From: Utricularia gibba
Taxonomy: Eukaryota; Plantae; Magnoliophyta
Direction of reading: 5' to 3'
Length of the DNA: 64,000 bases
Assembly (NCBI GenBank): GCA_002189035.1
Contig: NEEC01000004.1
Location: 3,038,001 to 3,102,000, forward strand
Numbering within the stretch: the stretch's first letter is position 1; each line of letters starts with the position of its first letter. Positions 1 through 62,449 of the stretch are shown in pieces. The translations under genes were made by a program, and so were the position numbers. The notes below the pieces were generated by a model that worked only from the letters and a program-made list of their open reading frames with translations, made no database searches and had not been told where the DNA came from.

Positions 1-3000
1 AGGTTGATATACATGTTAATGAGCAACTTGAGGTTGTGCAGAAACATAACAAAAAACTCATTATGAACCAATATGAAAATATTTACTAAATAAAAAATCA
101 AGTTATAAAAATGAAACTTATTTTTACTAATACACATTAAACTTGTTTATTCTATATTTTTTAATTCATTTTTTTTTGTTTTAGATGACCTAACTCATGT
201 TTGAGATTCAATCACACAAAATGAAATTGGAGTATTTGCTATTAGAACAATCGAAATACGGTGGAATTGAGGTGCAAAAATGAACAATTGATTGCCAAAC
301 AAAAAGAATACATCAACCGTCAAGTAGAAATATTAAAATTATTAGAAAAAATAGAGATGCTAGAAGAAGAATTATAAGTTTCTCAATTGCAAGTTCAATG
401 GTATGAAATGATATTACAATTAGTGGTCAACAAAGAGATATGCGCTATACAAGTACATCTACAATCAAAGGCAATGAAAAAGGTAGAGTCACATCCAAGA
501 AAAAAGGAAAATGAAATTAGATATCAATAATATTATTTTTTAGAAATATCGACTTATTTTATAATATTATATTCGAATCACAACAATTTGATTATTTCAT
601 AGGTTCCACCTATTAAAAATTATTCTGCAACATTTTTTGTGAAACAATCTTTCAAAATCTTATAATGCATAGCTGCCATCTCTAATTTTTTGATAAGTAA
701 ACAATGTTTTTTCCAAAAAAATTGAAAATAAAAGACACCCCTACAAATTTAGAAGGACAAAACAAGAATATTTATCTTTTTTTTTTCTGTAAAATTGACT
801 TATTGTGTAGCATTATGTTGGACTTTAACTAAATTGACTCATTTTGTAGATTGTTAATATTAAATTGTTTTGTATCATTTTTTTTATAAAATTGCACTGC
901 GAAATCATTTATTCATAGGTCATGTATCCAATTTTTAACAACTAAATGATTTTTTTCAAAAAAATTTAAAAATTAAAAAAAACAATCATACAACTTTCTA
1001 TTTCTACAAACTCATTTAATTGTAATTTTTAATTTAGTAGTTTCTGAATTCAATTTTTCTTTAAAATGAATAAATTTTTAATTATTATTAATATATTTAA
1101 AATATTTAAAATTATATTATAAATTGTAAATAAGTAAAAAATAATATATAAAAAGTGATTGATTTTCGCATGCAAATCATTTAAGTAAATTTTCTTTTGT
1201 TTTGAATAAACTTAACCATTTATAATATGTTTTCAATTATTTCATATTGTATTATAAATTATAAATAAATAATTGGAATAATAATTAAACATTATAGTTT
1301 TCTTTATTGAAGTGATTATATCTCAAAGAAAATAGTTTTAATATAATTAATGTTTTAAATTTTTTAATTATATAAAAATCACATTATTAAAATAATTCAA
1401 ATATAATAACAAAATAAAATAGATGAATCAAAGCAATGATTGTTTTAATTATTTTGACATGTAGTATTTTATAAATAATATTTATTTTATTGTTATTTAT
1501 TACAAATGTAACTTTTAAGTTATTTCATAAAAAAAGCTCAAAACATTACTCTCTTTTAATTCTCATACTAACAGTTACTTTTTCCTTCATTTCTTTTTAT
1601 CTTTGTTATGTTATTTGTTTTTATCATGCATGTAAACAATCTAATCATCTAATCATTACTATCAATTTCGACATGTCATCTCATGAATAATATACTATTT
1701 ATCCAAATTAATGTTGCATGCATCATAAATCTTGTTGGCATATATTTTATATTTCGTCCTTTTGTGCCTATATTTATTATTAGGATATATATGTACAGGT
1801 GTATAGATTCATCTATTCACATATTTAGGTGCGTCAATTTATGATTTAAAAATTATAGATATGTTAATAATTTCAATTATAATATTGACATTATTCTAAA
1901 TTATTTTTAAAATATAGTAAAATTAATGAAACAAATATTGCAATGAATATGTATATTTTCTCCTGAGATAAATCCAATCGGAATTTGGAAACAAATTTTC
2001 ATAAACTATTTGTGTCATTATTATCATAACCAGAATACATTTCTATAATCATGATTAAATAATTAATTAACATGAATAGATTAAAATTAAATAATCAATA
2101 ATTTATAGATATGATAACATCAAATTTACAAATCCACAAATATAAATTTTAAATAAAAAATTTTACATTCACTAAAAATTAAAGTAATAACCCATTAATG
2201 ATAATCGTCGAATTTTGAATGGCGAATATTAAGCAGTCGATATTAAAATGGGCAAAATTATGATAAAATCAAGTGAATTAGTTAAATAAATAAATAAATA
2301 TTTATTATTTAAATAATGATTAAAAATATGAAAATTAAAATTAAAAAATAACTGCATACAACGAACCCGCACCGGATTCTCCCTACCTGTGCACTGGGTA
2401 CGCGGGAATCAGTGACTCCAACAAATCAATGATTCCCAAATTTTTTTATGCAAAAATACCTTAAATTTTGTAATAATATTAAAAAAAATATTTAACTTAA
2501 TCCCTAATTAGGTGATTCTATCATAAATTAAGATTTCAAAATATATAATAATTGGCATTTAATATTATGTGTATTTCAGGAGGTTGTAGGTGACCAAAAA
2601 ACAAATATTAGAAAAAATACATATACTTTTTAGATACCAACAATCTAAGATATTTTAAAGTATCTGATAATAATTTATTATAAAATATACGATAATTTCC
2701 AAATATTGACAGCCTCCAATTTTATTGCAGCAAATTAATGATTACAATTAATATTATTGCATTTTAGATATTTAAAGATTTATAAATTTCAATATCTATA
2801 TAGTTGAAATAAGTATATAGAATAAATAAGGTGATTGTCTAACCCCAAAAATGGGTTTATCCATCTCTCTACATGAAATATAAGTATAAAAATAAATATG
2901 AATTTTTTTCTTGATTTCTTTATGCTTTGTCCTTATCTTCTAATTTAATAAAGAAAGAATTGTCTTCAACTTTAGAATCATTCGACAATTCCATCTAAAG

Positions 3001-3299
3001 TAACACAAAAATATATCATTTTTTTATTTTATTTTTAGAGTTTTCATAAGTTAACTACTTCTTTGTTTGCTAGAAATCCTTTTTCTTAGTCTTAGTGTGA
3101 TCTACTTCATTGAATTGGAATTCAAAGGAAAGAAGACATGAAGTTTAAATAACTCACCCAAAACACTTTTTAAAAGATTACGGTGTAGAGTAGGTTAAAG
3201 GTAATAAATTTTTAGGTACTATTTAATTTAAGATTTAGTTTATTACTTTTTTTTACCTACAAATACTATGTATGAATTGGGTTCAATAGTAATGATATC

Positions 3300-3750
3300 T
3301 CCCAATGTACCAAAACTTGCTGTTACCCCACCTAGGAGACGTAAGGATTGTTACATAAAATTATTTGAATGATAATCATGTAAGGAAGACGGTATTTGCC
3401 ATTTGCATCAAGCTTAATCTTCTTTGATTGGTTGTGTACTCAATCAAGCGCGTTATTTGTTCTTGACTATGGATCTCATATTACCCGCAAAAATTGAAAA
3501 TCCATAATCCAAATTTCTACCGGAATATCATTTGGTTAGGCCATGCTTGTATGAACAACCATCATTAATCTTCTTTCTTTGATAAGAATTTATATAATTT
3601 TTATCGAGAGATCAAAAATTTCGATCCAGAATGCAATGGGATCTCGAAAGATCATGTCTTCATCCATAGGATTTCAAGTACTGGCATCAATTGAAACTTC
3701 GATTCTTTCTAAATTGCTAATTTTCAAATGATATCCACATTATTCACAAA
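3300..3750 (-). mobile_element. Possible LINE ORF1 (DUF4283-like) relic
   Basis: The minus-strand translation, with stops, contains IAFWIEIFDLSIK and GKYRLPY. These resemble the FW(V/I)QIHxLP and YERLP motifs of plant L1 ORF1. Heavily degraded; boundaries approximate. Confidence 0.3.
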
Positions 3751-4284
3751 TATTCATTTTTGAGTTTAAAAATTTCTTATAATTTAATCCATAACATTTT
3801 TTTGCATTGAATCCACAAATGCTTGTATTTTTGAGTTGTTTGAGATCATTAGCTCTTTCTCTTAGAGTTAAACAATTTATAGCACATCTATCAAAAGTGA
3901 GTAAAATATTATACCTGATTATAACAATCTCGTTTGCAAAATTATATTTTGAAAAAGGTATGCTGAAATTGAAATTGATTGAAAATAAGGTGGTTGAAAT
4001 ACCCATTACAATGACTAAAATTAATAAACTGGATTAATTAATTTTTGTCACAGATCCACTATAAACATTTTGATCTGGGAAAAACCGGCATCACCCCATA
4101 ATAAGCGGCATTACCCCAATTCGCATATAAAAAAAACATTTCATTTACGTTTCCCTCGAATTCCCATAATTATCTCCCACCAAAAATAAGTCTTTCGAGC
4201 AAAATACCAACATGTGAAGAATCACTTATTACACGAGTGAAGATTATCGTATATACCAAACTGCATCGTCTTGACACGTGGGCT

Positions 4285-6917
<2,633 letters not shown>

Positions 6918-8229
6918 CGTTAGCTGCAGAAGTTCAAACTAACAAAAACACACAAGCTGAATAAGATTGCAGGAAAGCAACATAAAATTAACGTTAACCT
7001 TAGAATTACAATCGCCAAATTCGAAAAAAAAGAACTCTTTCTAAAGTCTACCTGATGTTACACCAGGGGAATTCTCGAATGACTCTCCCAATGATGAAAA
7101 TCCGATTCCAGATACCAGCACAACAATAGCCCTTTCATTTCATTCTTAAATAGTTTTTCACTGGAAGAGGGACATTCGAATTTTTCCACCGATTGCAACT
7201 AAAAAAGAAATGAAACTTGCCTTCCACACTCCTATTCCGTTGTCTCTTATTTCAGATATCTTCCGTGCCTACTCTTAAAATGAACTTCACAAAATGAATT
7301 GATAAAATATATTTTAAAATGAAAAATTTGTTATTTTGCATAGTGTGACACTAATTTATAATGGCATATAAATAGCATTTTTTCCCCTTTTGTCTATTTG
7401 GATAAATAGAGTATAATAAAAAATCAAATTAAAATACGTCATTTAATAATAAATTATATATCTAAAAGAAAAATATGTCATTTAATGACATCAATTTCCA
7501 TTAAAATAAAATAGTAACGCGAAATAAAATGAAACATCCAAAAAAGCCATGAACCGACTCCAAATGCTAGAAATGAAAAATGGAGAAAGTAATCAAAAAA
7601 TTGAAATGAAAATAGAAAAAAAAAGGTCCTGTTAGAAATTATATTGTTAAACTAATTTTTATTTTATATTCATGTGTTATTACAGAAGAAGTTCGAAAGG
7701 GTCAAATCTTTGATGATTCCATCATCTATGATGGAGTTGCGAAAACTTCTGGATGGTATCCTACTTATAATATCTGTAAAATGATAAATAATTGTATTTC
7801 GCAAGACTATTTATTTTTTTGATAATGAATAATAAAAATATGTGTGGAGCTGGAGCCATAATCTTTTTGTTAAAACATGTTTGCATCAATGCGCAGTCCC
7901 GTGCGTCCGAGTATTGCAGTGGGACTACCGACACCGACAACCTTGGAGCATCGGCCAGATACAAACCATCGCCGAGTGGAACCGAGTGCCACTTTCTTCA
8001 GAGAACAAAAGGTTGTGAAAAAGTGAGGTGAGGGAGACATCGGAATACCTGAACTACCCCTATTTACCTACTTTCTTCGTTTTTCTTTCCTTATTTATTT
8101 TAGGAATTCAATAGTGTAATTGATACTATAGGTCTATTTGAAAGTGATTCATTTAAATTACTTCCAAAAAGTACTTTTTGAGAAGCATTTTTTTAATAGT
8201 AAAAAAGTGTTTACAAAATATACATCAAG

Positions 8230-8704
8230 AGCATGTGTGGACTCAATAAGTAGTGAAAGGGTGAGTAGAGACAGACTAATCCGGAGGAATATGAAGGAGC
8301 CCGGTGTTATAAGGTGTGAGTGCTTGGCCAACACTCTGATGAAGAAAAGGGGCAATCACATTATGCCTGAATTAGTCTGGAACAAGCTGCCCCTTCATTG
8401 CCCAAAAAAAGGGGAAAAGAAAAAGAAAAAGAAAAAGAGGAGAAGAAAAAATGGGTTGGCAACCGTGATCTTAAGTGACTTTGGAGGGATCAATTCTATA
8501 AGGTATGATCTTCGAAAACACTCCTCAAGAGGAATCTATTTATGCTTATTTGAGTGATGAAATGACATGCACACTTGCACTTCTATAGCTCATGCACCGA
8601 ATTTATTCTCAGTTTTTATGTTCATCGTTGTTGCTGAAGGAACCAGTTTTTTGTTAGTCTTAGGTAGGACTTGGGGACAAGTCTGGTGTCGTTGTAGCAT
8701 AGTG
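8230..8704 (+). mobile_element. 3' internal (UTR) remnant of an Athila-like Ty3/Gypsy element
   Basis: A purine-rich GAAAAA run is followed by the Athila-type CTTGGGGACAAG motif just before the LTR start TGATAA. The junction is homologous to 22921-22968. Confidence 0.65.
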
Positions 8705-10009
8705 TGATAACACACAATTTTCATGTTTTAGAATATGCAAAATTATAAATTTTTAATTATGTTTAAGTGTTTATTTTATAATTTTAAGTGTTTTTATGTA
8801 ATTTAGGAAAATGTGATTTTTAGTGTAATTAGTGGGCTAAATCAAAGGATTTAGCCCACCCCATGTCTAACCCGATTTTGGAGTCTAGCAGCAACCCAAG
8901 AATCAAGGAAAAATTTGGATTTCGTGCAAGTCACCAAGGTGTAGGGGGCAATGAGTACACTGTCATGGCGGCAGTCTGCAAGTCAGGGCCTGGAGCAGCA
9001 GATCGATCAGAGAATGTACTTGCCTTGGACAGTGGGAGGCGAGAGAAAAGATGAGGAGAGAGAGTGAGAGTCGCAAAAAGGGAGATCACCCCTGAATTTT
9101 CAGGGGCACACACGAGGGGGTTTCTCCCCCAACCCCAACTCAAACATGAAGAACACGAAAGGAGAAGGAAGAAGAAAAGGGATTTTTTTGGAGAAGAACC
9201 TCCATCGGGAAGGAAGGCCTTCATCACCAAGAGTAGCACCGGAGTCCAGTTTAGCGCTACTGTTCCTGGATGTGAACAGTAGCTAACGGGCGGAAGAACA
9301 ATCTTTATCTACTTTCCGTTTTCTGAACATTTAGAGTTTCTGCATTTGACTTATTTACAATGTTTATGCCATTTTGGTCAACTTACATGAATGGGTAAAC
9401 CTAAGGAGGGAAACAAGTAGTTTCACAACTTAGATGCTTGGTTTAGAGGTAGACCAACAAACCAAGACGTGAGCAGTCGGTGTTAGTCCAGGATAGAACC
9501 AGTAGAACCAGGTAGACCTAGTTCTATATGCTCTGCATGCGAGTAGACCTAATTGCAATGTTGGTTATGATATTGGGGACTAGCTTAGCCGAAAATATGA
9601 TGAATGACCTGGGTAGACTTAGGTTATTTGAAGTTGTGAGTGTAGGAAGATAATAAATTGAGTTAGGAAGCTTAGCATAACACCACCCACAGACCCTTAA
9701 GGTGTCCTCGTATTAGTCTGAGTCAAAACCAATACCTATTACCCTAGCGTAGAAACCTGATATTGCTTACCTACCCTGTTTACTGAACTTGTTTACCACT
9801 GTTAGTCCCAGCTTAGACTAATACCTACTGTTATCTGAAATTATGCATGTACTAAAACACTTAGCAAGCACAAGCTCTCGTGATCGACCCCGATATCCAC
9901 TATACAAGTTTTCCAAATTTGTATTTTGTGTAGATTAGGGATTATAAATTTATTTGATACGGATTTTCTATTTTTATTTGCAACGATATTAGGAAAAAAC
10001 CGTTTATCA
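8705..10009 (+). mobile_element. Athila-like 3' LTR (copy A, 1305 bp)
   Basis: Termini TGATAAC...CCGTTTATCA. It is strongly similar to solo LTR B (52621-54044), especially 9200-10009 versus 53110-54044. Confidence 0.85.
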
Positions 10010-10720: not shown

Positions 10721-10984
10721 AGGCATTTTGTTACTAAAAGCTAGTGTTTTTCATTGTTTGATTTTCAAATCTTTTGCTACATGATAGCTACAATCTTGTT
10801 TTGTTTCATTTTGTTAGATATTAGCTAATATGCAATTTTTGTTACATGTTAGATAAAAAAAGACATCATCATTAGACTCAAGTTTGAAATATGCATAATC
10901 CATTAGAATTCAAAACAAAGTCACATGACAACTAAGAAGTTCACATGTTATTCTTGTTATTTGGACATGTTGTTTCTTTAGTAG

Positions 10985-11858
10985 GTCTTACGGAAGATCC
11001 TGCTAAGGTAAGTACTATTTCTGGTTTACCATATCCACGTGATGAAAGAGGTGTTCGTGCATTTTTAGGCCATGTCGGATTTTACAGGAGGTTTATTAAA
11101 GGTTTTTCTCAAATTGCTCGGCCACTAACCAACCTCTTGCAGAAAGACGTTGAGTTTGTTTTTTCAAATGAATGTAAGCATGCTTTTGACACTCTCAAGG
11201 TGGCTGTGATATCAGCTCCTATCATACAAGCACCCAATTGGAATGAGCCATTCCATGTGATGACTAATGCTTCCAACTATGTAGTAGGAGCTGTGTTAGG
11301 CCAGAAACTTGATGGAAAGGATACCGTTATCAGTTATGCCTCCAAGACCTTGGATAATGCTCATGCGAATTACAGTACAACTGAGAAGGAGATGCTAGCG
11401 GTTGTATTTGCCTTGGAAAAGTTCAAAGCTATTTGTTGGGAAACAAAGTGATTGTGCACACAGACCATGCAGTCATCAAGCACCTCATGTCAAAGAAGGA
11501 AACCAAACCGAGGCTTATGAGGTGGGTCTTATTGCTACAAGAGTTCAATGTGGAAATCAGGGATAACCCTGGGAAGCTCAATGAAGTTGCAGAGCACCTC
11601 AGCAGAATCGAGCAACCCATGGATGGTGTACCAATTGTTGAAGAATTTCCAGATGAACAACTCTGTGCGATTAAGGCTGATGCAGGGAAGACTAGTGAAC
11701 TGTGGTACGCTGATATAGCCAACTATCTGTGCACTGGAGAGATGGCATTGGACTTAAAGAGTTATGAGAAGTTGAAGTTGAAAAGTGAGAGTAAGCACTA
11801 TTTTTCGGAAAACCTCTATCTGTGGAAAAATTATGCTGATGGTGTGGTGCGACGATGT
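10985..11858 (+). mobile_element. Athila-type Gypsy pol fragment (RT C-terminus, RNase H, start of integrase), frameshifted
   Basis: [88 protein letters not shown] and WYADIANYL. There is a frameshift near 11430. Confidence 0.92.
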
Positions 11859-11859
11859 T

Positions 11860-12660
11860 TGGTTCTCAACTTGGTTCTTGATTGATTGGGTCATGAAAGT
11901 CTTCAAAATATCCTCCAATGAACTTCCAGAATTTCCTCCAGAATTATTCTGGTTTGGAGGCTGAAATTGCTGTTGCATCTGCTGGTATGGCTTACGAAAT
12001 GGTGGAGCTTAATAAGAACGTTATTGTTGCTCCTGGAAATTTTGCTAAAATCCTTGCTGTCCAGTAGATGAACTCTCACCCTTGTAAGAGTTATCATTGT
12101 TACTCCATCTGAAATTTGGATGATCCCTCCACCCTAGGTTGTAGGTGTTCGAATAGGGATCATATTTCTTCCTTTCTGACTCCATATATCCCATAGCTTT
12201 CACATGCTCCTCCTCCATCAATTCGAGACATTTATCAGCAATGTGTCCCATTCTATGGCATTTCCTGCAAGGCATATTCTTAGCTTGGAATATAAATAAT
12301 TTCTTCATCATTTCAGACATTGCAGCCACATTTTTCATCAGCTCACTTTCTGATGACTTTGGCTTCCATTCCAGTTCATAAACTCTTCTGTTTGAGGCCT
12401 TTTTTCTAATTATATATCTGGAGTGTTCAGCCAACTCCTCAAGTAATGCAAGAGCTTCTGTGGGGGTCTTTTTTCTCAAAAACCCACTTGCTGCAGAATC
12501 CACCATTGCTCTATCTGTGAATAGAAGTCCATCATAAAAATATTTGACCAATGCATTTGTCTGAAATCCATGGTGTGGGAAGGATCCTAGCAAATGATTA
12601 AAACGCTCACAATATTCATGTAAGGACTCTCCACTTGTTTGGTGTTCTATAAGTGCGTAG
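11860..12660 (-). mobile_element. Athila-type Gypsy gag fragment
   Basis: Minus strand reads HQTSGESLHEYCERFNHLLGSFPHHGF..LVKYFYDGL..DRAMVDSAASG..KKTPTEA, then CRKCHRMGHIADKC and YDPYSNTYNLGWRDHPNFRW. These are typical Athila Gag motifs. Confidence 0.85.
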
Positions 12661-12769
12661 AGGTTTGTTGTGAAGCTAGTAAAATTTTTAATGGTTTTTC
12701 CATATGTGAATTTCCATTGTTTTTGGCTGTTTGAGAAATATTCTGCTATGTATATTCATGTTGTGTTTG

Positions 12770-18103: not shown

Positions 18104-19210
18104 CTATGCTTCCCCCTCTGATTTTATCAGATCGTCTTTCGTTAATGTACCCGAGCAATCGATATCAAGGACTTCAAACCATTCCATCACCATTGCAACA
18201 TCCTCATCACATATCTTTCCCATTTCTTTTAGCTTGTAGATGACGAATTCTACAGCACTGGATGCAAGTTTAAAACAAGCATGATTTATTTTATGTAAAG
18301 GAAGATGAACAAAAAATGCTTACATCACAACTTTGTCATTGTCCAAATCTGCTGCTTCAAGGTCTGAAAATGTGAGCTTCCTTGTAAGAACCATTTTCAC
18401 AAGGGATTTCATTCTTGTCTCTGTGTGCAACTCAATGAGAGTGCAAAAGAATTGAGCCAAACAAATGGTACTAATCACTATCCAAAAGGCAGCAAACACC
18501 CTCCCTTCTGGAGTTGAAAATGTGTAATCACCATATCCAAGAGTAGTCATTGTAGCACAAACACAATACAATGAGTCCAAAATATCATACCCTTCTTTCA
18601 TATGCAAGAAAATAGTGCCAACAACTGCCACAATGATAAGAATGAGTAGCGTGATGTAGAGTTTATATTTGAGTTTATTGGCTTCAACTTCTCGAACCAT
18701 ATCCCTAGAATCGTGATGCTTGTGTAAATGCATTGCCTTAACCAAGTAAATCTCTTGATTCTCAACAATCTTGTTAGCAGCTTGGCTCAGCAAAAAACCC
18801 ACAAGACCCATGAATACAAAAACGCATGCTAAATTCTTTGATGCCGTAGTTATAGGCAAAAGATCTCCATATCCTACGGTTGTCATTGTAACAACACAAA
18901 GGTAAAACGAATCAATTATCCCATTTGTCTTGTGGCCCTTGATTTCATCTTGAACCAGAAAAAAGCAAAGCGTTCCTACACCCACATATGTAAATAGAAT
19001 GATGATAACTACCTTGATGTTCAAGGTATTTGTAGACATTGAACAAGTCTGATGATAAAGGGAAAGATTTTTGTGTTCTTGATCCTTGTAGCATACACCA
19101 TCAGGGGCGCTAATGCTTCGATGGAATCTCCTTCTTGTTATAGAATTGTATTGAAGTGATCTTCGACATGAATCCAATGTCTCAACAAGCAACCTTTCTT
19201 TATCAGCCAT
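18104..19210 (-). CDS. TPK1: Two-pore potassium channel, TPK/KCO family (346 aa, 2 exons)
   Basis: Exons 19210-18324 and 18257-18104 flank a 66-nt GT-AG intron. It has two pore loops (TMTTVGYGD, TMTTLGYGD), an N-terminal RRFHRSISAP 14-3-3-type site and EF-hand-like DLDNDKVVIAVEF and DIDCSGTLTKDDL. Confidence 0.95.
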
Positions 19211-20261
19211 GAGAGAATCTCATGCCACTACATAACAAGAAATCCAATGTTTAATTGAAGTTGTTCTTCAATGCATTTAATATGAAAAATATAAAACAAT
19301 ATACTTCGAAATTTGGAAACAAATATTTTCCACATTTGGGAAACTTTGAATCCAAAATATTAGAGGTAGAAAAGACAGCAGGGGGTAATTAAAAGTGCCT
19401 ATCATCCTCTAATTTTCCGTCAAATGAAGCATGACTAAACATAGTAAAATAAATACATCAAGCATTTACTTGTGGTGTTATTGAGTTTTTATAGTTTTCA
19501 TGTTTTAGAATGATTTTTGTAATATTAAACAACTTATACGTGATTTCTTGGAAAACAGTAGAATGGCAAATAAGTGGTAATTTTAAAAAATAAGACTAAC
19601 CATATTTGATCACACATTAGGAAAATAATTCCACTAAGGTTACCAAAAAAGTTTACAAAAAAAGCTCTTGAAACTCCAGGGAGTATTTTTGACTTCTATA
19701 CATGCTCTCCTTTATCAAAACTACAATTCAAGTTTTCTTGTTCCTCTACGCATATACCTTCTAAAACACTGGGAATAGGATTGGGCATCCCTTTCCTCAT
19801 CTATTTATATCATATCCTCTACCAACGATGATATGTTCCCTTATTTTGAGGAAAAGTCATTGGACCACCATAAGACAAAAAGAGCGAATGATAACCTTGT
19901 AAGCGCAATTTTTATATATTTTTATATGCATTTTTTGTTTCATTTATATCAATATCATCAAATTAGGATTTAATTTAAATATTTAATTATTTTTATTAAA
20001 AAAATTAATATTTGTGGTACTGTGTATTTTATTTTTATTTCTACTTGTTTTTAGATGGATGCTTGAGTTAGGGATCGAAGCCTAGAGTTAGAATCAATTT
20101 AACGGAGGACTAAAATGAGAATGAATGCATTAATTTTGCATTGAAAGGAAGAAATGCATTGGGATCACCATATTGATATCGACAATGATCCATGACTATG
20201 TGGAGTAGATATATAGAAATATAAATAAAAGATAATTATAATGGATATTAATGCATGCCAA

Positions 20262-22968: not shown

Positions 22969-24149
22969 TGATAATACATAATTTTGATTGTTTCAAGATA
23001 GGAAAAGTATTATACTACAAAACTCGGATTTTATTGTGTGTTTTAATGTTTTTATGATTAGCAGCATTGTTTGTGTATGTTATTCTTAATTCGAACTAAA
23101 TACCGATTTAGTCTCAATCTTTGTTCCAACCACTTCCTTTGAGCAATGCAACACATTTTAACAGTCCAAATCTCAAGGAGCAGAAAGAGAATAGTGAAGG
23201 TTGTAAAAGATATGGACAAAAGTTGAATGGAAATACACCGAAATCCAAGGAGATAAAAAAAAGATGGATTTTGGACATGATGAAGAGTGAGAAAATATCT
23301 CTCACACTTTGAACAACAAGCCACACAATTCTGGGAAGAGGGATCTAGTAGGAAATGGTAGAAGAACTATAGAGAACGAAGGAGACAAAATGAAGAACCA
23401 AGCTTACCGCTGAACTTTCCTTTGTTTATCAAGAGCACTTATTTCTAGTCGGGAGTAGTTTTATTTTTCCACACGAGCTATGACAATTTCTGTTTCTACT
23501 TATGTTTTTTTCCTTCTTATTGCACTGTGACATGAACATGTTTTGGTTGCTATGTTATGAACGTGTTTCATTTTACTTCAGCATGAGTGGCTAAACATAC
23601 GTAATGCCTTGAAGTAGAAGGGAGTGTGTATGGTTATTGCTTATTAGACTACATTAGCTTAGTAATCACACTATTTTCCTACAAACCAGAATAGATCTAA
23701 GAGTAGGAAGTAGTGATATTCATCATAAACAGACCTAATTAGAGGTAGATCAAAGATTAGAAACAAGAATGGTTTAGGTAGACTTGAATTCTTCATTTGT
23801 TGAGTGAATGATTATTGAGTTGTATGGGTTAAGTGTAGGAATGATCATGTCACTCCTAGAAGTTTCAAGGCATTGCATTATCTAGTTTTAGTTAGTAGCC
23901 GACTTTATGTGTGTGTTTTTCTATTGTATTTTATCATAAACCTACCTTAGTCTTAACATAGACTTAATCTCTTAACTTTGACACACAGTGAATGCATTCA
24001 CTTTCACAGGAAGCACATAGCTCATTGTGTTCGATCCTAGCCCACTATGGTCATATTTCTTCTATAATTGAATGTGAATTAGCTTTATAAATTTTATTTG
24101 ATAGGAGAATTTGCAATTTATAATGACTTGCTAAATTTTTCGTTTATCA
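22969..24149 (+). mobile_element. Athila-like 3' LTR (copy C, 1181 bp)
   Basis: Termini TGATAAT...CGTTTATCA. It shares the GCATGAGTGGCTA motif and the ATAAATTTTATTTGATAGG tail with the other LTRs but is strongly diverged. Confidence 0.75.
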
Positions 24150-27650: not shown

Positions 27651-28841
27651 TTGTATCTCTTGGATTTATCCAGCCCCTAAGAAACATTGCACTGTTTCCT
27701 AAATGATTTTTGTTTTTTGTGTGAAAACTTATAGGAAAAGGTATCGATGAGGCAATTAAGTATGGATTATATGAAAACATCAAAATTATCATTAACAAAA
27801 TAAATGATGTGTTATCATATAATTTCCATTATACATTATCCAAAACAAAATTCTGTTGGGTATTTGTGGTGAAGGCACCCCATAAGTGTAATGGAAATTA
27901 TTAGTGTATTGCATTATCAATATTCAATTGTAGATCAGAACCTTACATGATAGCCAATAGGACATAATACTACGTTCATTTCGTAAACTATTTAGAAATA
28001 TTAATATTTAAAATAACACTCTCAGTTGTCATATATGGATATTTATCTGTGAACACCATTAGATAGTTGAATCTCTATAAGTTATTATTACTATTATTAT
28101 TATTAGAAACACCACCTAGGTTTTACAGTTCAAAAGTAAGTAGGATTTTCAAGGTTGATGTGGGTGCGTTTACCACCAGTCAAACGGCGCCAGTCCGGTA
28201 GTCAACCCGAACCCTCATGTGTCGGTTCTTTTCCGAGCCCCAGGTAGTTTGACCATGGAGTCTCCGCTGATAATTTTAGCCCCAGCATCGAAGTAGACTT
28301 CTGATTTTCTAACGAACTTGAGGTCGGTAGTCGGTGGCCGAGCTGAATTCTGGTGAAGAAACTCACTTTCAGGTTGGAGAAAAATGATATTTTGGTATTG
28401 CGCAATGTATGATGAGGGTCCCAAAGCGCCGTTTGTAGAAATCGATACCGTTATGGGTCATTCATTCATTTTTAGTCGTGATAGATCTTTCATGCTGCGT
28501 TTTTAGTAGCGTTTTTGCTGTCTATAAAGTCTTGTAGCATTTTGTTTCGAATCTCACTAAATCTTCATTTCCGGATTGTTCTTTGTTTCTCAAAATTGTT
28601 CTTAAGAATATTTGATGACTTCGCCGCTGAACACGTGATTCTGTTAAAAAAAATTGATGATGGATAGTTGTAGTTTCTGAGCTTCAATTTTATTTGCTTT
28701 GCTGGTTCTGGGTTTAAATTTTTCAATGGATCAAGGTGTTTTTACTTTCTAGCTGGTGATCATATCACTTGCTGGGTAATTGCAATGTACTTCTATATAT
28801 TCCATGTCGAGTAGATGTGCCCAAGAAATTTAAGGGTTCAG

Positions 28842-30798
28842 ATGGCATCGTCAGGATCTCAGTTCAACAGCCAATCCTCAATGCTACCTCCACGACAGCA
28901 GCTTCGACCCGTGGGTGTAGGACTCCAGAATTCGCTATCTTTTGCCATACCAGATGTCTCAGAGTCGCTGAATCCTCATGAGCGTGGTTCGAATTCAGAC
29001 AAAATTCATGAGTCTCAATCAGAAAGTGCCAGCTCACGTGAAACTTGGCCTACTGCTGATGCTTTAGAACCTAAGAAATTTGAGAAACGAAAAGAGGGGG
29101 AGAATGGTTTTGCAGAGCATTCTGTGGTTAGGCATATTTCCAGCTCAGATAAAATTTCTATTCCGGATGTAGCAAGAGACCGGGTAGAAATTATAGCAGA
29201 AAGGATGCAAAACCTGCCAGATGAGTACCTCGAAAAGTTGAAAAATGAACTTCGATCTATGCTTGAAGGCTTAGGTGACAGTCAGCAAAGAGAAGAGTTC
29301 CTATTCCTGCAAAATCTCGTCTTGTCCAGAAATGATTTGACTGAGAAAACATTGCAAGGTGCACACAGGGTTCAACTGGAGATATTAGTTGCAATAAAGA
29401 CAGGAATTCGGGCGTTCTTGCATCCAAACGTTAGCCTTTCACAAGCTTCAATTGTTGATATTTTGTTGTACAAGAGATGCAGGAACGTAACCTGTTTTAG
29501 TCCACTTCCAGTTGAAGATTGTGCCTGTGAATTGTGTTCAAAGAGAAACGGTTTCTGCAACCTCTGTATGTGTACAATTTGCAACAAGTTTGATTCTGAC
29601 TTTAATACATGCCGCTGGATTGGATGTGATTTCTGCTCCCACTGGACTCATATAGATTGTTCCATTGCTAATAGGTTGATTGGTATGGGTTCGTGTGTTA
29701 AGAATGGGGTTAGCTCATCAGAGTTGCTTTTCAGATGCCGATCTTGCAATAGGACATGCGAATTGTTAGGCTGGGTCAAGGATGTCTTCCAGCATTGTGC
29801 TCCAAGTTGGGATAGGGATGCTTTAACAAGGGAACTGAAGTATGTGAGCAGAATTTTTCGTTTCAATGAGGATTCTGAAGGCCGAAAGCTCTTCAGGAAG
29901 TGCGAGGAACTCATTGAGAAACTGAAAGGTGGTGTTGCTGAAGCCGTCCCCTTAAAGGAAATCTCGATATTCTTCCATGGTAAATTTTAACAACTTCTCA
30001 TAATTGAAGCTTTGCTTTTCACATTCCAAAGATCTAAATCCGAATTTCAATTGTTTTCTGTTTGCTACATATATGAACTCTGCAACCTCGGGAACTTATC
30101 TCATTGGGCCATACATTTCTTTCATGTTTTTGTTTTTTTTTTTCGGTTTCGTTTGGCTTGGCAGCAATGCCAATTATGTTTTCCTTTACACCCTTTCACC
30201 TTGTTCTTAACACACAGAAATGGAGGCAGATACCTTGATGAGGGTAGAAAATGAGGAAGCTGGCAAGATGATAACCCCACATGAAGCATTCAACCAGATA
30301 GCTAATGTTGTTCAGGAGGCTGTTAATAAAATGGAAACTGCTGCTGAGGAGAAGATGCGAATGGTAAAAAAGGCACGCAACGCTGTGGAGGCGTGTGAGC
30401 AGGAACTCAAGGATAAAGCCAGGGAAGTTGCTGCCCTGAAGTTGGAGAAACAGAGAAAGAAGATACAGGTTGAAGAGCTGGAGAGCATCGTGAGACTCAA
30501 GCAAGCTGAAGCTGACATGTTCGATCTCAAAGCAAATGAAGCACAACGGGAGGCTGAGAGGCTGCAACGAATACTTGTTGCGAAAAGTGAAAAGATGGAG
30601 GACGACTACACCATTAGGTATCTCAAGCAAAGGCTACAAGAGGCCGAAGCTGAGAAGCAATATCTATTCGAAAAGCTGAAGCTTCAGGAGAGTTCAAGGG
30701 TATCTCAGGGCACTGAAGGAGCCAGTGATCCATATAGCAAAATCCAGGACCTGCTTAAGAACATGTACGATACCGCACAATCGAAACCAGATGCATGA
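28842..30798 (+). CDS. OBE1: OBERON1/2-like PHD-finger coiled-coil protein (572 aa, 2 exons)
   Basis: join(28842..29979,30218..30798). Motifs MLPPRQQL, ESASSRETWPT, RVQLEILVAIKTGIRAFLHPN, PHD region GFCNLCMCTICNKFD..CRWIGCDFCSHWTHIDC, ELLGWVKDVFQHCAP and VRLKQAEADMFDLKANEA. OBE1 versus OBE2 is not resolved. Confidence 0.95.
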
Positions 30799-34477: not shown

Positions 34478-36094
34478 ATGGATGCACCTCAAGATTCAGA
34501 AATGTCTTCTAGCTTCCACAGTTCCTGCAGTCAGCCTACGCCTTCACAGGTCCAGCCATATGTATTTTCAGGCTCGAGAACTGGTGCATCTTCAGGGCAG
34601 AGCTTGGGTGGTGAATTTTACACACTGGAATCAACTCCTGACTTCGTTGCATATAATCCTTCAGCTGCAAGCATACGAAGCCCCTTTTCGCCCCAGGATT
34701 CTCATTATTCACTTGCATCTGATCATCAGCACTCACCAGATCTTACTGTCTATGATTCAGCTATCCCTGGCTCTTCTGGGGTTGAAGATGAAAACAAGTT
34801 GATGCATGCACTCTGGGTACTGAGGAATGAACTTCTTGGCCCTGAATCTGATACCGATGATATTGGCTGCTTCGGTCCTCAAGTTATACAGCCATCTCCC
34901 TTCTCAAGGTATGACAGAATCCTGGAAAAAGCACCAAACATGGACCTGAAGAAGTTGCTTATCACCTGTGCTGAAGTTGTTGCCGAAGCTGACACCATCT
35001 CAGACAGGCAGGTTGCATTGTCAGCTGCAGAAGCGTTGATAGAGATTTTGGAGAAAAGAGTTTCAGTATCTGGCGATCCATTGGAAAGATTAGGTGCTTA
35101 CATGTTGGAAGGAGTCAGGGCAAGGCTTCTACATTCAGGAAGTACTATTTATAAAAGGCTCAAGTGCAAGGAGCCAATAAATCCAACTAGCTCAGAACTG
35201 ATGTCTTACATGCATGTAATATATGAAATCTGCCCATACTACAAGTTTGCATATGTTTCATCGAGTGTCATCATCAGCGAAACCATGGAAAATGAGAGCC
35301 GGATACACATAATCGATTTTCAGATAGCTCAAGGAAGCCAATGGGTATCCTTCATTCAATCAGTCTCCCGTCGGCCAGCAGGTCCACCTTATCTCAGAAT
35401 CACTGGCGTTGATGATCCACAATCAGCTCATGCCCGGGGTGGAGGACTCCAGTTAGTTGGTCTGACACTAGCAAATGTCGCGAGGTCATGTGGAGTACCG
35501 TTTGAGTTCCATGGAGCAGCTATCTCTGGAAGTGAAGTCCAGTGGGAGAATCTCGGAGTTCAGCATGGAGAAGCTGTGGCTGTGAATTTTCCATATGCCC
35601 TGCATCACATTCCTGATGAGAATGTGAGCATTGAGAACCACAGGGATCGCCTTCTAAGACTTGTCAGGAGCCTCTCTCCCAAGGTCGTGACCCTCATCGA
35701 ACAAGAATCCAACACCAATGCGACTGGTTTCCTGCAGAGGTTCCAGGAGTCTCTAAACTACTATGTGGCAATGTTTGAGTCCATCGATGCTGCATGCCAG
35801 AGGGAAGATAAGAAGAGGATCAGTACGGAAGAGCACTGTGTGGCAAGAGATGTTGTGAACATCATCGCCTGTGAGGGGCCTGATCGTGTTGAGAGGCACG
35901 AACCCTTTGGCAAGTGGAGGAGGCGGTTTGCAAAGGCAGGCTTCTCGCCTGTGAGGTTGAGTCCGGCTGTGGGAAAGGCAGTCTGCAATATGCTGAAAGA
36001 ATACAGCTCTAATTACACAGTGGGAGAAGGGAATGGAGCCCTGTATCTGGGATGGAAGAACAGGGCCATGTCAACCTGCTCAGCGTGGAGATAA
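34478..36094 (+). CDS. GRAS transcription factor, PAT1 subfamily (SCL13/CIGR-like), intronless, 538 aa
   Basis: VSVSGDPLERLGAYMLEGVRARL, LKCKEP, YEICPYYKFAY, IHIIDFQIAQGSQW (VHIID), GPPYLRITGVDD, NFPYALHHIPDENVS..NHRDRLLRLVRSLSPKVVTLIEQESNTN (PFYRE), C-terminal LGWKNRAMSTCSAW. Confidence 0.96.
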   Translation: MDAPQDSEMSSSFHSSCSQPTPSQVQPYVFSGSRTGASSGQSLGGEFYTLESTPDFVAYNPSAASIRSPFSPQDSHYSLASDHQHSPDLTVYDSAIPGSSGVEDENKLMHALWVLRNELLGPESDTDDIGCFGPQVIQPSPFSRYDRILEKAPNMDLKKLLITCAEVVAEADTISDRQVALSAAEALIEILEKRVSVSGDPLERLGAYMLEGVRARLLHSGSTIYKRLKCKEPINPTSSELMSYMHVIYEICPYYKFAYVSSSVIISETMENESRIHIIDFQIAQGSQWVSFIQSVSRRPAGPPYLRITGVDDPQSAHARGGGLQLVGLTLANVARSCGVPFEFHGAAISGSEVQWENLGVQHGEAVAVNFPYALHHIPDENVSIENHRDRLLRLVRSLSPKVVTLIEQESNTNATGFLQRFQESLNYYVAMFESIDAACQREDKKRISTEEHCVARDVVNIIACEGPDRVERHEPFGKWRRRFAKAGFSPVRLSPAVGKAVCNMLKEYSSNYTVGEGNGALYLGWKNRAMSTCSAWR

Positions 36095-43543: not shown

Positions 43544-44714
43544 TGATAAACGAAAAATTGTACAAGTCGTTAATTGCAAATTTTCCAATCAAATAAATTT
43601 ATAACCTAACCCACATTCAAGCATAAAACAATTATGAGCAGTGATTAGGGTTGAACACGAAGAGCAGGTGCTTGTCAAGTGATTAGCCAAAGCATGAAAT
43701 CAGTGTCACGTTGGCAAAATTGGTCTTAACTAGGACTAAGTCAGGACTACAACGAAATACAGTAAAGAAAAGTAACAAGTTTGGATTCGGTAGTTTCTAT
43801 AATGGAATGGGTGATGCCTTGGGACTCCTAGTGGATGTATGTATATCACTAAATAAGTTCACATAAATCAAAAATCATTCAACTAACTCACAAGATCTAG
43901 GTCTACCCGGATTCTTGTTTTTCCCCCTAATCTTTGGTCTACCTCTAATTAGGGTTGTTAGTTAGGTTTCACTACCTCCCCTCCTGGATCTATCCTGGTT
44001 TGCTAAAGAAGTAGTGTAACTTATGATTTATGAGGTCTAAAGATGGATTAGCATATTTCTCCCCTTCTCACCCCAAGGCATCCCCCTCTAAGTGCTTAGC
44101 TACTCATGGTAATGGAAAGTAAAACACCTTCATAGCAGATACTAAGCAACATCTTGGCTACAAATGCTAAACAATAACGAGCAATATGAAGCAAAAGTAG
44201 GACAAACACTTTGTTCACACAGGAAATCCAAATCTAGTCTTAGTTAGGAATAATAAATATGAAGAACGAAAATAATTTCTCAAGAGAAGCTGTGTTCTTC
44301 TGGTTCGTCGTCCCCTCCTTCTTCTTCCTCTAGAAAAATCTCTAGAAACTTGTCTTGAGTCTCCAAAGGTAGATCTGCTTCTCTCTCCAACTTTCCTCCC
44401 TTTTTGTCCAAAATCTTCCTTTTTTTCCTCCTTGGACTTTGTGTGTATTCTTCTTCAAACTTCTATCACATTTCCTGCCACTACACTGTTCATACTCGGC
44501 TCCTTGGGATTTGTGTTGCGACCCATGCTGCATTGCTTGAAAGGAACTGTTAGAAGGTTGGGACTAAATCGCAGATTTAGTCCCAACTAAGACTAAAAGT
44601 GCACTCCTACGGTACTTATGTGCAAAAATATAGAAACCGTCAATTAAGCTTAATTTTTGTAGCATAAAATGAGTAAATTCCATGCATTGAGCCACTCAAA
44701 AATATGTGTTATCA
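43544..44714 (-). mobile_element. Athila-like solo LTR (copy D) with 5-bp TSD CTAAT
   Basis: Minus-strand termini TGATAACAC...CGTTTATCA. CTAAT is present at 43539-43543 and 44715-44719. It is the sister of copy E (61254-62421). Confidence 0.92.
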
Positions 44715-45395
44715 CTAATATATACAATAGGAGTGATATCTAAATTTATTAAACCAAGGCTTCAATATGAATATGTATAAGTTGCTAAGCACCCGATTCG
44801 TCTTCCCACACTCCAGCCTACATTAAAAAAAAATGCTTCTTGCTTTTTTATTATAAAATAAAATAAGTTAGACAATTCAAAAAATTATTTTTACAACAAA
44901 AAACATGAAGATGTGGAGATTGTACTAATCCGCACAGCCCGACCTATTTCTTTAAATTAACAAAAAAAAATCCCAAGCACGGTGCTTGAGATTATTATTA
45001 TTTTATTTCATAATTAATAGAACTGGATCGTGAAATTTAATTCAATTCATACAATCCAAACTCTTTTTAATAACTTAATTTTTGTAATTAAAAAATATCA
45101 CAATACTTTTTAAAGATAACATTGAATGACATCATAGATTTAAATAAATCAATCCCCCACTTGGTTTCTATGTATCCATATAATGAACTTACAATGATTT
45201 TAAGTGAAAAGATGGGTAAAATTAAACCCAAATAAAAGCCACGTATTAAAGATAGGTAACATATTAAACTCACAAAACTTGTAGGGTCATAGCAGAAATA
45301 TAGAAGAAGGTTTTAAATTTGAAAGCAAAAGATTTGATTAAAGTTAAGTATTATGTACCATTTCTATTTTAAATGTTATAAAACTTAGTAAAAAA

Positions 45396-52620: not shown

Positions 52621-54044
52621 CGATGACACATTTTTCTTGAAATTCATAATGCAAAATAGTTATATTTTATTATGGTTTAGGTTAGATAAATGTGGTTTTT
52701 CATGCTTTAGTGTTGTTTATGTTAATCCTATGTGATTATGTTGAAAAGTGGACTAAATCCTTTGATTTAGTCCACAATTCTTGTTATTGATGTTTCAGTA
52801 AGTTCAGCAGGGAGATAAGCTGAAAATCAGACTTGCAAGCATGTAAAACAAGCGAAAAAGGGCGCAAAATCCAGAGAAGGACAAAGGGCATTGTTTTGCT
52901 GCCACCGCAGTCTGTAAGTTCAGGCCAGGAGCAGTACTGGAGCCAGGAACAGTACTCGCAGTCAGAAACAATGCAATGGAGTGAAGCAAAAGAAAAGGAA
53001 ATTAATTCGGAAAAAAGAAGAAAGGGCACGAAGAACACAGAGCAACCCAGAGGGGGGATGCAAGGGGTCTTCTTCCCCAACGGGAAAAACACCAACCAGA
53101 AGGGGGAAGGGAGGCCTTCATCACCAAGAATAGCATCGGAGCCCAATCTAGTGCTACTGTTCCGGGCGGTGAACAGTAGCTAACGGGCGGAAGAACAATC
53201 TTTATTTACTTTCTAGTTTTCTGAACATTTTGAGTTTCTGCATTTGACTTGTTTACAATGTTTCTGCCACTTTGGCTAACTTCTATGAATGAAATCGTGT
53301 TTTATTTCCAAAGCATGAGTGGCTAGAGTCTTAGGGATGCCTTAAGGTGAAGTGGTGTGGTGTGTGCTTAGGTTTGATAATGAAATTTATGTGTATTCCT
53401 TAACTCTTGTTTCTAACAAACTATGGGTAGACCTAAGGAGAGAAGCAAGTAGTTTCACAACTTAGATGCTTGGTTTAGAGGTAGACCAACAAACCAAGAC
53501 ATGATTAATCGGTGTTAGTCTAGGGTAGAACCAGTAGAACCGGGTAGACCTAGTTCTATATGCCTTGCATGCGAGTAGACCTAATTGCAATGTTGGTTAT
53601 GATATTGGGGACTAGCTTAAGCCAAAAATATGATTAATGACCTGGGTAGACTTAAGTTATTTGAAGTTGTGAGTGTAGGAAGATAGTAAATTAAGTTAGG
53701 AACCTTAGCATGACACCACCTACAGATCCTTAAGGCATCCTCGTATTAGTCTGAGTCAAAACCAGTACTTGTTACCTTAGCGTAGAAATCTGATATTACT
53801 TACCTACCTTATTTACTGAACTTGTTTACCACTGTTAGTCCGAGCTTAGAATAAGACTTACTGTTATCCGAAATCTTGCATCTACTAAAATATTTAGCAA
53901 GCACAAGCTCTTCGTGATTGACCCCAATATCCACTATACAAGTTTTCCAAATTTGTATTTTGTGTAGATTAGGGATTATAAATTTATTTGATACGGATTT
54001 TCTATTTTTATTTGCAACGATATTAGGAAAATTTCCGTTTATCA
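52621..54044 (+). mobile_element. Athila-like solo LTR (copy B, 1424 bp) with 5-bp TSD CATAC
   Basis: CATAC at 52616-52620 and 54045-54049. The 5' terminus CGATGACACA is a mutated TGATAACACA and the 3' terminus is CCGTTTATCA. The hairpin sits at the same +127 offset as in copy A, which supports the start. Confidence 0.88.
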
Positions 54045-62421: not shown

Positions 62422-62449
62422 TGCGGGCTATAGTAATGTCTCTGATTCA

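What the first reader, a model, noticed from the sequence alone, without database searches (positions are those of the whole stretch)
8667..8710. Athila-like element replaces its polypurine tract with a copy of the tRNA-Asp 5' end that ends exactly at the 3' LTR
Seen: 8688-8704 is GTCGTTGTAGCATAGTG, immediately followed by the LTR start TGATAAC at 8705 and preceded by TGGT and CTTGGGGACAAG. There is no purine run at the junction. Knowledge (recalled): plant tRNA-Asp(GTC) begins GTCGTTGTAGTATAGTG, a 16/17 match from position 1. Athila elements prime minus strands on tRNA-Asp (PBS TGGCGCCGTTGCC) and normally carry a GGGGG-containing PPT at about this distance from the GGACAAG motif. The first 11 nt (TGGTGTCGTTG) also mimic the PBS, so the site looks like a PBS/tRNA-5'-arm chimera. 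The single mismatch (T to C) would be a G:U wobble against minus-strand DNA. Inference: the primer tRNA's freed 5' arm, or a 5' tRNA fragment, could anneal to nascent minus-strand DNA and prime the plus strand at the LTR's TG, so one tRNA would prime both strands. Alternatively the site could aid circularisation or strand transfer. I recall no description of this, but I cannot search the literature.
Basis: partly seen in the sequence, partly recalled or inferred. Interest (0 to 1): 0.9.

Follow-up and report, generated by a model that had tools for sequence, protein, structure and literature searches.

The report
tRNA fragment replaces retrotransposon primer tract
In one decayed copy of a plant Athila-type retrotransposon, the G-rich tract that normally starts second-strand DNA synthesis has been replaced, 17 bases for 17, by a copy of the start of tRNA-Asp, the tRNA this lineage uses to start first-strand synthesis. 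A single copy cannot show whether this is a working mechanism or a one-off copying accident.

Summary
Window 8688-8704 matches nucleotides 1-17 of plant tRNA-Asp(GTC) at 16/17. All 112 tRNA-Asp genes fetched from plant contigs start with that string. The match ends at the base before the LTR start (8705). That boundary is confirmed by a second, solo LTR with a 5-bp target duplication and by alignment to relatives.

Six Athila-lineage families from other plants share one layout: a covarying hairpin carrying the TTGGGGACAAG-type box, a 22-25-nt spacer ending in a G run, then the LTR (TGAT, once TGTT). Five have a recognisable tRNA-Asp PBS. The window keeps the hairpin, the box and the commonest spacing (23 nt). 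Its last 17 nt are the tRNA copy, and no G run remains. So "PPT replaced by the primer tRNA's 5' end" is correct for this copy.

Function cannot be shown. The copy is a 5'-truncated, non-coding fossil, and no second copy of its family could be retrieved from any collection. I favour capture of the primer tRNA's free 5' arm by reverse transcriptase (template switch), with no demonstrated use. tRNA-primed plus-strand synthesis remains a live minority reading that a genome-wide junction survey would settle.

The parts
8625..8704 (+). Last about 80 nt of the internal region of an Athila-lineage element. This is the only part upstream of the LTR that aligns with relatives; how far the remnant extends upstream is undetermined.
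   Evidence: Alignment A2 with L243, L244, L245 and L246. No coding similarity to relatives anywhere in 1-8704.
8668..8683 (+). Conserved stem-loop: stem 8668-8673 with 8678-8683, loop GGGA 8674-8677. It carries the 12-nt box CTTGGGGACAAG (8670-8681).
   Evidence: Box identical in L243 and L244/L245, and 2-3 differences in L246, L248 and L249. Helix of 10 pairs: 91.7% of cells paired, 6 pairs changed on both sides, 0/500 shuffles reach this, slid controls at most 49%.
8684..8694 (+). PBS-like 11-mer TGGTGTCGTTG. It matches the Athila PBS at 9/11, and both differences are C-to-T. As RNA it can pair with the tRNA-Asp 3' end over 12 bp.
   Evidence: PBS string. Duplex energy -19.5 kcal/mol, against -42.4 for a true PBS.
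8688..8704 (+). Sense copy of tRNA-Asp(GTC) nucleotides 1-17 (16/17). It occupies the 17 positions where relatives have the G-run PPT.
8705..10009 (+). 3' LTR, 1305 bp, TGATAAC...GTTTATCA.
52621..54044 (+). Diverged solo LTR of a related subfamily, flanked by the 5-bp target duplication CATAC (52616-52620 and 54045-54049). It fixes the LTR termini independently.
10936..11882 (+). Neighbouring Athila-lineage pol fragment (end of RT plus RNase H). It is broken: truncated at both ends and carries at least one frameshift. It is not shown to belong to the same element and was used as bait for relatives.
12048..12755 (-). Neighbouring Athila-lineage gag fragment on the opposite strand (truncated).

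Best explanation
SHOWN. The stretch is the 3' end of the internal region of a decayed Athila-lineage (Ty3/gypsy) LTR retrotransposon, joined to its 3' LTR. It keeps the lineage's conserved hairpin and box and the usual 23-nt distance to the LTR. The 17 nt next to the LTR, which in relatives hold the G-run polypurine tract, are instead a sense copy of nucleotides 1-17 of tRNA-Asp(GTC), the minus-strand primer of this lineage.

INFERRED.
- The 17 nt were copied from tRNA-Asp inside the replication particle. During minus-strand synthesis the reverse transcriptase had copied U3 to its first base. It then switched onto the free 5' arm of the primer tRNA (or a 5' tRNA fragment), ran off its 5' end, and returned to the genomic RNA just 3' of the hairpin, so the PPT was lost.
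- The tRNA piece left annealed at the U3 border may have acted as a stand-in plus-strand primer in that one cycle. That would explain how a copy without a PPT still has a normal LTR border.
- After insertion the copy decayed: one transition in the 17 nt, and the 5' part and all coding capacity were lost.
- On present evidence the tRNA identity is a fossil of a copying event, not a demonstrated working part of a family.
For: - Identity and position of the tRNA copy.
- It is the lineage's own primer tRNA, which is in the particle. The PBS of relatives is complementary to the tRNA-Asp 3' end.
- Six other families keep a G-run PPT at these positions: L243, L244/245, L246, L248, L249, L250. The window's state is therefore derived and not lineage-wide.
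- The match is in sense. That requires minus-strand DNA to have been templated by the tRNA, as in a template switch, and not by the usual plus-strand read-through into the primer, which would give the antisense letters (inference from the standard reverse-transcription scheme; PMC5371799).
- The copy starts at tRNA position 1 and ends in the D loop, which is the part of the primer left free when its 3' 18 nt sit on the PBS.
- The copy is a dead remnant: no gag, pol or env-like similarity in 8.7 kb upstream, no PBS and no 5' LTR.
- One transition in 17 nt fits neutral decay from a perfect copy.
- No second family member turned up in any collection.
- Among 136 matches to the 17-mer in plant-rich metagenome contigs, none was a clear Athila junction.
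Against: - The replacement is exactly 17 for 17 and keeps the commonest spacing of 23 nt between box and LTR. A random template switch would seldom achieve this, which hints at constraint on spacing in at least one cycle.
- I see no convincing microhomology at either joint.
- Absence of other copies is weak evidence.
- One unresolved contig (L080) has the perfect 17-mer followed by TG and then TGATAAT.
Confidence: 0.5

Rival explanations
1. The site is a working plus-strand origin. The primer tRNA's freed 5' arm, or a 17-19-nt 5' tRNA-Asp fragment, anneals to the minus-strand DNA just upstream of U3 and is extended, so that one tRNA species primes both strands in a subfamily of elements.
For: - The minus-strand complement of 8688-8704 pairs with the tRNA-Asp 5' end over 17 bp (about -27.6 kcal/mol with RNA parameters). 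The same positions in five relatives give -3 to -8.
- The 3' end of the match falls exactly at the LTR's first base.
- Spacing to the conserved hairpin is preserved.
- 5' tRNA fragments of about 19 nt are abundant in plant pollen and in ddm1 mutants, where Athila elements are expressed (PMC5605234).
- From established knowledge: retroviral-type RNase H cuts 13-19 nt from a recessed RNA 5' end, which could free a primer of this length.
Against: - There is only one copy, and it is dead.
- No family-level conservation can be shown.
- Six related families use an ordinary G-run PPT.
- The common 19-nt fragment would end in two bases that mismatch the LTR start.
- There is no known precedent.
Confidence: 0.2
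2. Ruler model. The conserved hairpin positions the element's RT/RNase H, which cuts the genomic RNA at a fixed distance (about 23 nt) whatever the sequence. The tRNA-derived 17 nt are then heritable but neutral filler, and the primer is still a piece of genomic RNA.
For: - The hairpin covaries across monocot, eudicot and water-lily elements.
- The distance from box to LTR is 22-24 nt in the five aligned families, with about the same distance (one nt shorter, measured from the GGGAC core) in L250, and exactly 23 nt in the window.
Against: - All six comparators nevertheless keep a G run next to the LTR, which argues that the sequence matters.
- There is no direct evidence for a measuring mechanism.
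- The single-copy limitation applies here too.
Confidence: 0.15
3. The 11-mer TGGTGTCGTTG is a second, 3' tRNA-binding site, analogous to the 3' PBS of yeast Ty3 or Drosophila gypsy. It would help tRNA capture, genome circularisation or strand transfer.
For: - It pairs with the tRNA-Asp 3' end over 12 bp, including G-U pairs.
- 3' tRNA-binding sites exist in Ty3 and gypsy (PMC5371799; PMC1635307).
Against: - In Ty3 and gypsy the 3' site binds a different part of the tRNA from the 5' PBS, so one tRNA can bridge both ends. Here the 3' site would compete for the same 3' acceptor strand.
- The pairing is much weaker than a real PBS (-19.5 against -42.4 kcal/mol).
- The match to the tRNA 5' end (16/17) explains the letters better than the match to the PBS (9/11).
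Confidence: 0.05
4. No tRNA capture is involved: either a chance resemblance or drift from an ordinary PPT, or an LTR that landed inside a tRNA-Asp gene or a tRNA-derived SINE.
For: The PPT region of one relative (L248) shares 8 of these 17 positions with the window by eye (sequences).
Against: - 16/17 at a fixed site has a chance of about 3e-9, and 0 of 100 shuffles matched.
- No remainder of a tRNA-Asp gene exists anywhere in the window.
- None of 112 tRNA-Asp genes has TGGT upstream.
- The Athila box sits at its normal distance upstream, so the flank is element, not a tRNA locus.
- Only 17 nt are tRNA-like, with no A/B-box body of a SINE, and there is no Rfam hit.
Confidence: 0.03

Closest known systems
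Canonical internal/3' LTR junction of Athila-lineage elements (Athila, Calypso, Diaspora, FIDEL; here L243-L250)
   Same: The TTGGGG-type box upstream of the 3' LTR (PMC2844528), the hairpin, the 22-25-nt spacer, an LTR starting TGAT and ending ATCA, and tRNA-Asp as minus-strand primer in the lineage.
   Different: Relatives have a run of 3-6 G ending 3-5 nt before the LTR. The window has none, and carries tRNA-Asp 1-17 in those 17 positions.
Bipartite or 3' primer-binding sites of yeast Ty3 and Drosophila gypsy
   Same: A sequence related to the primer tRNA sits at the 3' end of the genomic RNA near U3, in Ty3/gypsy-type elements.
   Different: Those sites are complementary to the T, D or anticodon arms and bind the same tRNA molecule as the 5' PBS. 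The window's motif has the same sense as the tRNA 5' end, so it mimics the tRNA rather than binding those arms.
Copying of the primer tRNA's 3' 18 nt into plus-strand strong-stop DNA (regeneration of the PBS in every cycle)
   Same: Reverse transcriptase uses the primer tRNA as a template, so tRNA letters enter element DNA.
   Different: That copy is antisense to the tRNA, comes from its 3' end and lies next to the 5' LTR. Here the copy is sense, from the 5' end, and next to the 3' LTR.
Half-tRNA and self-priming variants (copia, Ty5, Tf1; Neumann et al. 2019 survey)
   Same: They show that LTR elements have evolved unusual primers from parts of tRNAs or from their own RNA.
   Different: All concern the minus-strand primer. 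No plus-strand primer derived from a tRNA is described in the papers I could search.
5' tRNA fragments that target Athila transcripts in pollen (Martinez et al. 2017)
   Same: 5' tRNA fragments of about 19 nt and Athila RNA meet in the same cells.
   Different: Those fragments act on complementary sites in the mRNA. Here the element RNA carries the same sense as the fragment, so it is not such a target.

Membership tests
Athila lineage of Ty3/gypsy LTR retrotransposons | LTR with TG..CA ends of the TGAT...ATCA type, over 1.2 kb long | tested here: met
   LTR 8705-10009 is 1305 bp, TGATAAC...TTATCA. The solo LTR with a target duplication has the same ends. The TATCA terminus is reported for ATHILA.
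Athila lineage of Ty3/gypsy LTR retrotransposons | Conserved TTGGGG-type box upstream of the 3' LTR | tested here: met
   Box at 8670-8681 is identical to L243 and L244/L245. The 'ttgggg' PPT core is described for FIDEL and Athila-like elements.
Athila lineage of Ty3/gypsy LTR retrotransposons | [quoted passage not shown] | tested here: inconclusive
   No PBS in the window at up to 3 mismatches in the right place, because the 5' part of the element is missing. The relatives used for comparison do have it.
Athila lineage of Ty3/gypsy LTR retrotransposons | gag-pol of the Athila clade and an env-like region before the 3' LTR | tested here: not met
   No retroelement domain and no translated similarity to relatives in 1-8704. 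This copy is a non-coding remnant, so membership rests on the non-coding landmarks.
Athila lineage of Ty3/gypsy LTR retrotransposons | G-rich polypurine tract abutting the 3' LTR | tested here: not met
   Longest G run is 1 and longest purine run is 2 in the last 17 nt. G runs are 3-6 in six relatives. This is the finding itself.
3' primer-binding site (Ty3 / gypsy type) | 3' sequence complementary to a tRNA region other than the one bound by the 5' PBS, allowing one tRNA to bridge both ends | tested here: not met
   The motif has the sense of the tRNA 5' end. Its only complementarity is to the 3' acceptor strand, the same region the PBS binds.
LTR insertion into a tRNA gene, or tRNA-derived SINE | Rest of the tRNA (positions 18-72) present beyond the element, or a contiguous tRNA body | tested here: not met
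   No tRNA by ARAGORN. No match to tRNA-Asp 18-72 at up to 4 mismatches per 20-mer. The upstream flank is the Athila box, not a tRNA leader.
tRNA-primed plus-strand origin (hypothetical new kind) | Motif inherited by independent, complete copies whose 5' LTR starts at the primer's 3' end | not testable with these tools
   No other copy of the family was retrievable. This copy lacks its 5' LTR.

The most novel reading that the evidence does not exclude
A subfamily of Athila-type elements has given up the polypurine tract. It starts plus-strand DNA from the 5' arm (or a 5' fragment) of tRNA-Asp annealed to minus-strand DNA at the U3 border, so that one host tRNA primes both DNA strands.
Probability: 0.2. 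Interest if true: 0.9.

Novelty: new variant of a known kind. Interest (0 to 1): 0.5.

Why it matters
All retroviruses and LTR retrotransposons studied so far start their second DNA strand from a purine-rich piece of their own RNA. A copy in which that tract is cleanly replaced by the first 17 letters of the element's own primer tRNA is one of two things:
- a rare, readable fossil of reverse transcriptase copying its primer's free arm, which shows what is physically close to the enzyme at the U3 border; or
- the first sign of a different way to prime the plus strand.

Either way, the question can be answered by a simple count of junctions in the source genome. The comparison also showed that the "TTGGGG PPT core" of Athila-type elements is the loop side of a covarying hairpin kept at a nearly fixed distance from the LTR, from water lilies to grasses. 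That bears on how these elements choose their plus-strand start.

Tried and rejected
- Other copies of the family, via proteins. Searches with the two longest ORFs near the junction (8132-8554 +, 8934-9308 -) found nothing.
- Locating the source genome. The exact host GRAS protein is not on record.
- Metagenome scan with the 17-mer (position 11 free). This was useful for tRNA identity but not for junctions.
- Viral-contig scans with the 17-mer, the PBS and the junction. They gave only chance hits in GC-rich phage-like DNA.
- Prokaryote-genome scan. One chance hit.
- BLAST of 4000-10009 and of the solo LTR against all fetched loci. Nothing.
- Ten of the twelve contig look-ups. One returned no DNA. 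Two gave one old insertion seen in several samples (L251-257) and loci (L258-260) in which I found no PBS, box or clear LTR pair, so no 3' junction was resolved.
- Literature. Wright and Voytas 2002 is not held. ATHILAfinder and the Arabidopsis centromere preprint give their junction sequences only in figures. FIDEL supplements are not held.
- Rejected readings: a decayed PBS (9/11 against 16/17 for the tRNA 5' end, and the letters after the 11-mer do not follow the PBS); an LTR inserted into a tRNA gene; a SINE; a known RNA family (no Rfam hit); a target site for 5' tRNA fragments (wrong sense).

Full report
THE OBSERVATION. Window 8688-8704 reads GTCGTTGTAGCATAGTG. It is preceded by TGGT (8684-8687) and CTTGGGGACAAG (8670-8681) and followed by TGATAAC from 8705. 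I took the tRNA sequence from tools, not from the finding. Two papers print GTCGTTGTAGTATAGTGG, once as a plant tRNA-Asp primer and once as a soybean small RNA. A metagenome scan with the 17-mer, leaving position 11 free, returned plant contigs on which ARAGORN calls tRNA-Asp(GTC) genes starting exactly at the match. In all 112 genes of that kind position 11 is T. The window therefore equals tRNA-Asp 1-17 at 16/17, with one T-to-C change. It is the only such match in the 64-kb window at up to three mismatches, and none occurred in 100 shuffles. No tRNA gene and no remainder of one exists in the window.

THE LTR BORDER. The LTR runs 8705-10009, from TGATAAC to GTTTATCA. A second, diverged copy at 52621-54044 has the same ends and is flanked by the 5-bp duplication CATAC, so it is a solo LTR that fixes the termini independently. 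The tRNA-like stretch therefore ends at the last internal base.

WHAT THE ELEMENT IS. Upstream of the LTR there is no gag, pol or env-like remnant. No Pfam retroelement domain occurs in any + strand segment of 1-8704. No translated similarity to relatives was found, and there is no PBS. The copy is a 5'-truncated, non-coding fossil.

To the right of the LTR lie an Athila-lineage pol fragment (10936-11882, +) and a gag fragment (12048-12755, -). The pol fragment is truncated at both ends and carries at least one frameshift. I used it as bait. The nearest proteins are only about 60-66% identical, so the source species and family are not in the collections. The encoding contigs nevertheless gave complete Athila-lineage elements from other plants:
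- L243 (assembly GCA_030169165.1)
- L244 and L245 (GCA_030979885.1, one family)
- L246 (Prunus brigantina)
- L248 (Sesamum angustifolium)
- L249 (Victoria cruziana)
- L250 (Rhodiola kirilowii)
. Most have a PBS complementary to the tRNA-Asp 3' end. In L248 the PBS is decayed beyond the search threshold.

THE COMPARISON THAT MATTERS. In all six families the junction has the same layout:
- a 12-nt box (identical to the window's in L243 and L244/245; 2-3 differences in L246, L248 and L249; shifted by one base in L250);
- a spacer of 22-25 nt that ends in a run of 3-6 G, followed by 3-5 more bases;
- an LTR that starts TGAT (TGTT in L243).

The box is the loop side of a hairpin whose stem covaries. 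Over 10 pairs, 91.7% of cells are paired and six pairs change on both sides. No shuffle out of 500 reaches this, and slid controls reach at most 49%. The window keeps the hairpin (8668-8683), the box and the commonest spacing of 23 nt, and it aligns without gaps to L245. Its last 17 spacer positions carry the tRNA copy, with no G run longer than 1. The normal state of the lineage is a G-run PPT.

WHAT IT COULD PAIR WITH.
- As RNA, the spacer can pair with the tRNA-Asp 3' end over 12 bp (-19.5 kcal/mol). A real PBS gives -42.4.
- The minus-strand complement of 8688-8704 pairs with the tRNA 5' end over 17 bp (about -27.6 with RNA parameters). The same positions in relatives give -3 to -8.
- The local RNA fold is somewhat more stable than shuffles (z = -2.75).
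- No Rfam family matches.

HOW IT MOST LIKELY AROSE AND WORKS. The tRNA concerned is the one packaged as minus-strand primer. The copy is in sense, begins at tRNA position 1 and ends in the D loop, which is the arm left free when the 3' 18 nt sit on the PBS. A sense copy next to U3 requires the minus strand to have been templated by the tRNA. That points to a template switch at the U3 border, not to the usual plus-strand read-through into the primer, which gives antisense letters next to the 5' LTR (scheme in PMC5371799). These steps are inferred. The piece of tRNA left annealed there could have primed the plus strand in that one cycle, which would explain a normal LTR border without a PPT.

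I put about 0.5 on this "captured, not shown to be used" reading. The remainder goes to a 3' tRNA-binding site or chance.

The exact 17-for-17 replacement, with spacing preserved, is the main point in favour of constraint. The main point against function is that no second copy could be examined.

WHAT IS KNOWN.
- FIDEL and other Athila-like elements are described with a "ttgggg" PPT core some way upstream of the LTR.
- ATHILAfinder reports a junction conserved in 97% of Brassicaceae ATHILA.
- Ty3 and gypsy have 3' tRNA-binding sites, but these are complementary to other tRNA arms.
- 5' tRNA fragments of 19 nt accumulate where Athila is expressed and cut complementary sites.
- None of the papers I could search describes a tRNA 5' copy in place of a PPT. 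The search covers open-access text only, and Wright and Voytas 2002 is not held.

LIMITS. The evidence rests on one copy. The comparison uses only six families.

TRANSPARENCY.
- I used a degenerate 12-nt search pattern for the non-coding box in two scripts and wrote it in a notebook entry. It served only to locate the box.
- Alignment tools printed consensus lines, which I did not use.
- Slip: while reasoning I recalled from memory short primer-site strings of well-known retroviruses and the start of an animal tRNA.
- The three letters CCA added to the tRNA 3' end rest on textbook knowledge of tRNA maturation.

Noticed in passing
window 8668-8683; L243 19081-19142, L245 30508-30569, L246 15108-15169, L248 15639-15700, L249 13553-13614: The 'TTGGGG PPT core' of Athila-type elements is part of a covarying hairpin (tetraloop GGGA, AGGA or AGGG). 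It lies at a nearly fixed 22-24 nt from the LTR, from a water lily to a large-genome species. I found no description of it in the papers searched.
   Followed up: partly
window 52621-54044: Solo LTR of a related subfamily with the target duplication CATAC. Its 3' 800 bp are 89-92% identical to LTR 8705-10009, but its 5' 500 bp are much more diverged, and its first base is C instead of T.
   Followed up: partly
window 10936-11882 (+) and 12048-12755 (-): Athila-lineage pol (RNase H) and gag fragments lie directly right of the LTR, on opposite strands. This is debris of one or two further elements, so the LTR sits in a nest of Athila remains.
   Followed up: partly
L080 699-727 (metagenome contig Ga0209569_1013816): A perfect tRNA-Asp 1-17 string is followed by TG and then TGATAAT, on a 48% GC contig with no tRNA call. 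It has no other similarity to the window. It could be a second junction of this kind in another organism, a decayed tRNA-like sequence, or chance.
   Followed up: partly
window 7656-7781 (+): A 29-residue match to plastid Ycf2 (E = 6e-7, just below Pfam's cut-off). It is possibly a small plastid-derived insert inside the element remnant.
   Followed up: no
window 8405-8450: A run of about 50 purines (A/G) lies 250 bp upstream of the LTR. It is far longer than any PPT and its role is unknown.
   Followed up: no
window 8700-8715: A small hairpin GUGUG-AUAA-CACAC straddles the internal/LTR border in the predicted RNA fold.
   Followed up: no
window 6079-6189: A perfect 67-nt direct repeat with a 44-nt offset (a short tandem duplication) lies inside the presumed internal region.
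   Followed up: no
window 43544-44715, 61253-62421, 23676-24149, 62367-64000: These are LTR-like repeats of another family, in inverted and direct orientation. A copia-type gag follows the copy at 61253-62421, so a Ty1/copia element probably runs off the window end.
   Followed up: no
window 18323-19219 (-), 28815-30795 (+), 34478-36094 (+), 56212-57502 (+): Host genes: a two-pore K+ channel exon, an Oberon-type PHD protein, an intact intronless GRAS gene and an MBOAT-family gene. The element remnants therefore lie in gene-rich plant DNA.
   Followed up: no
L251-L257 (PBS at L251 8191-8208): One old Athila-lineage insertion was recovered from several metagenome samples of one host. Its PBS differs from the tRNA-Asp PBS by three C-to-T changes, which shows how decay makes TGGTG-type strings out of a PBS.
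   Followed up: no
L013, L039, L064, L066, L018: Tandem arrays of tRNA-Asp genes and pseudogenes, including one with anticodon ATC, occur on plant-like metagenome contigs.
   Followed up: no
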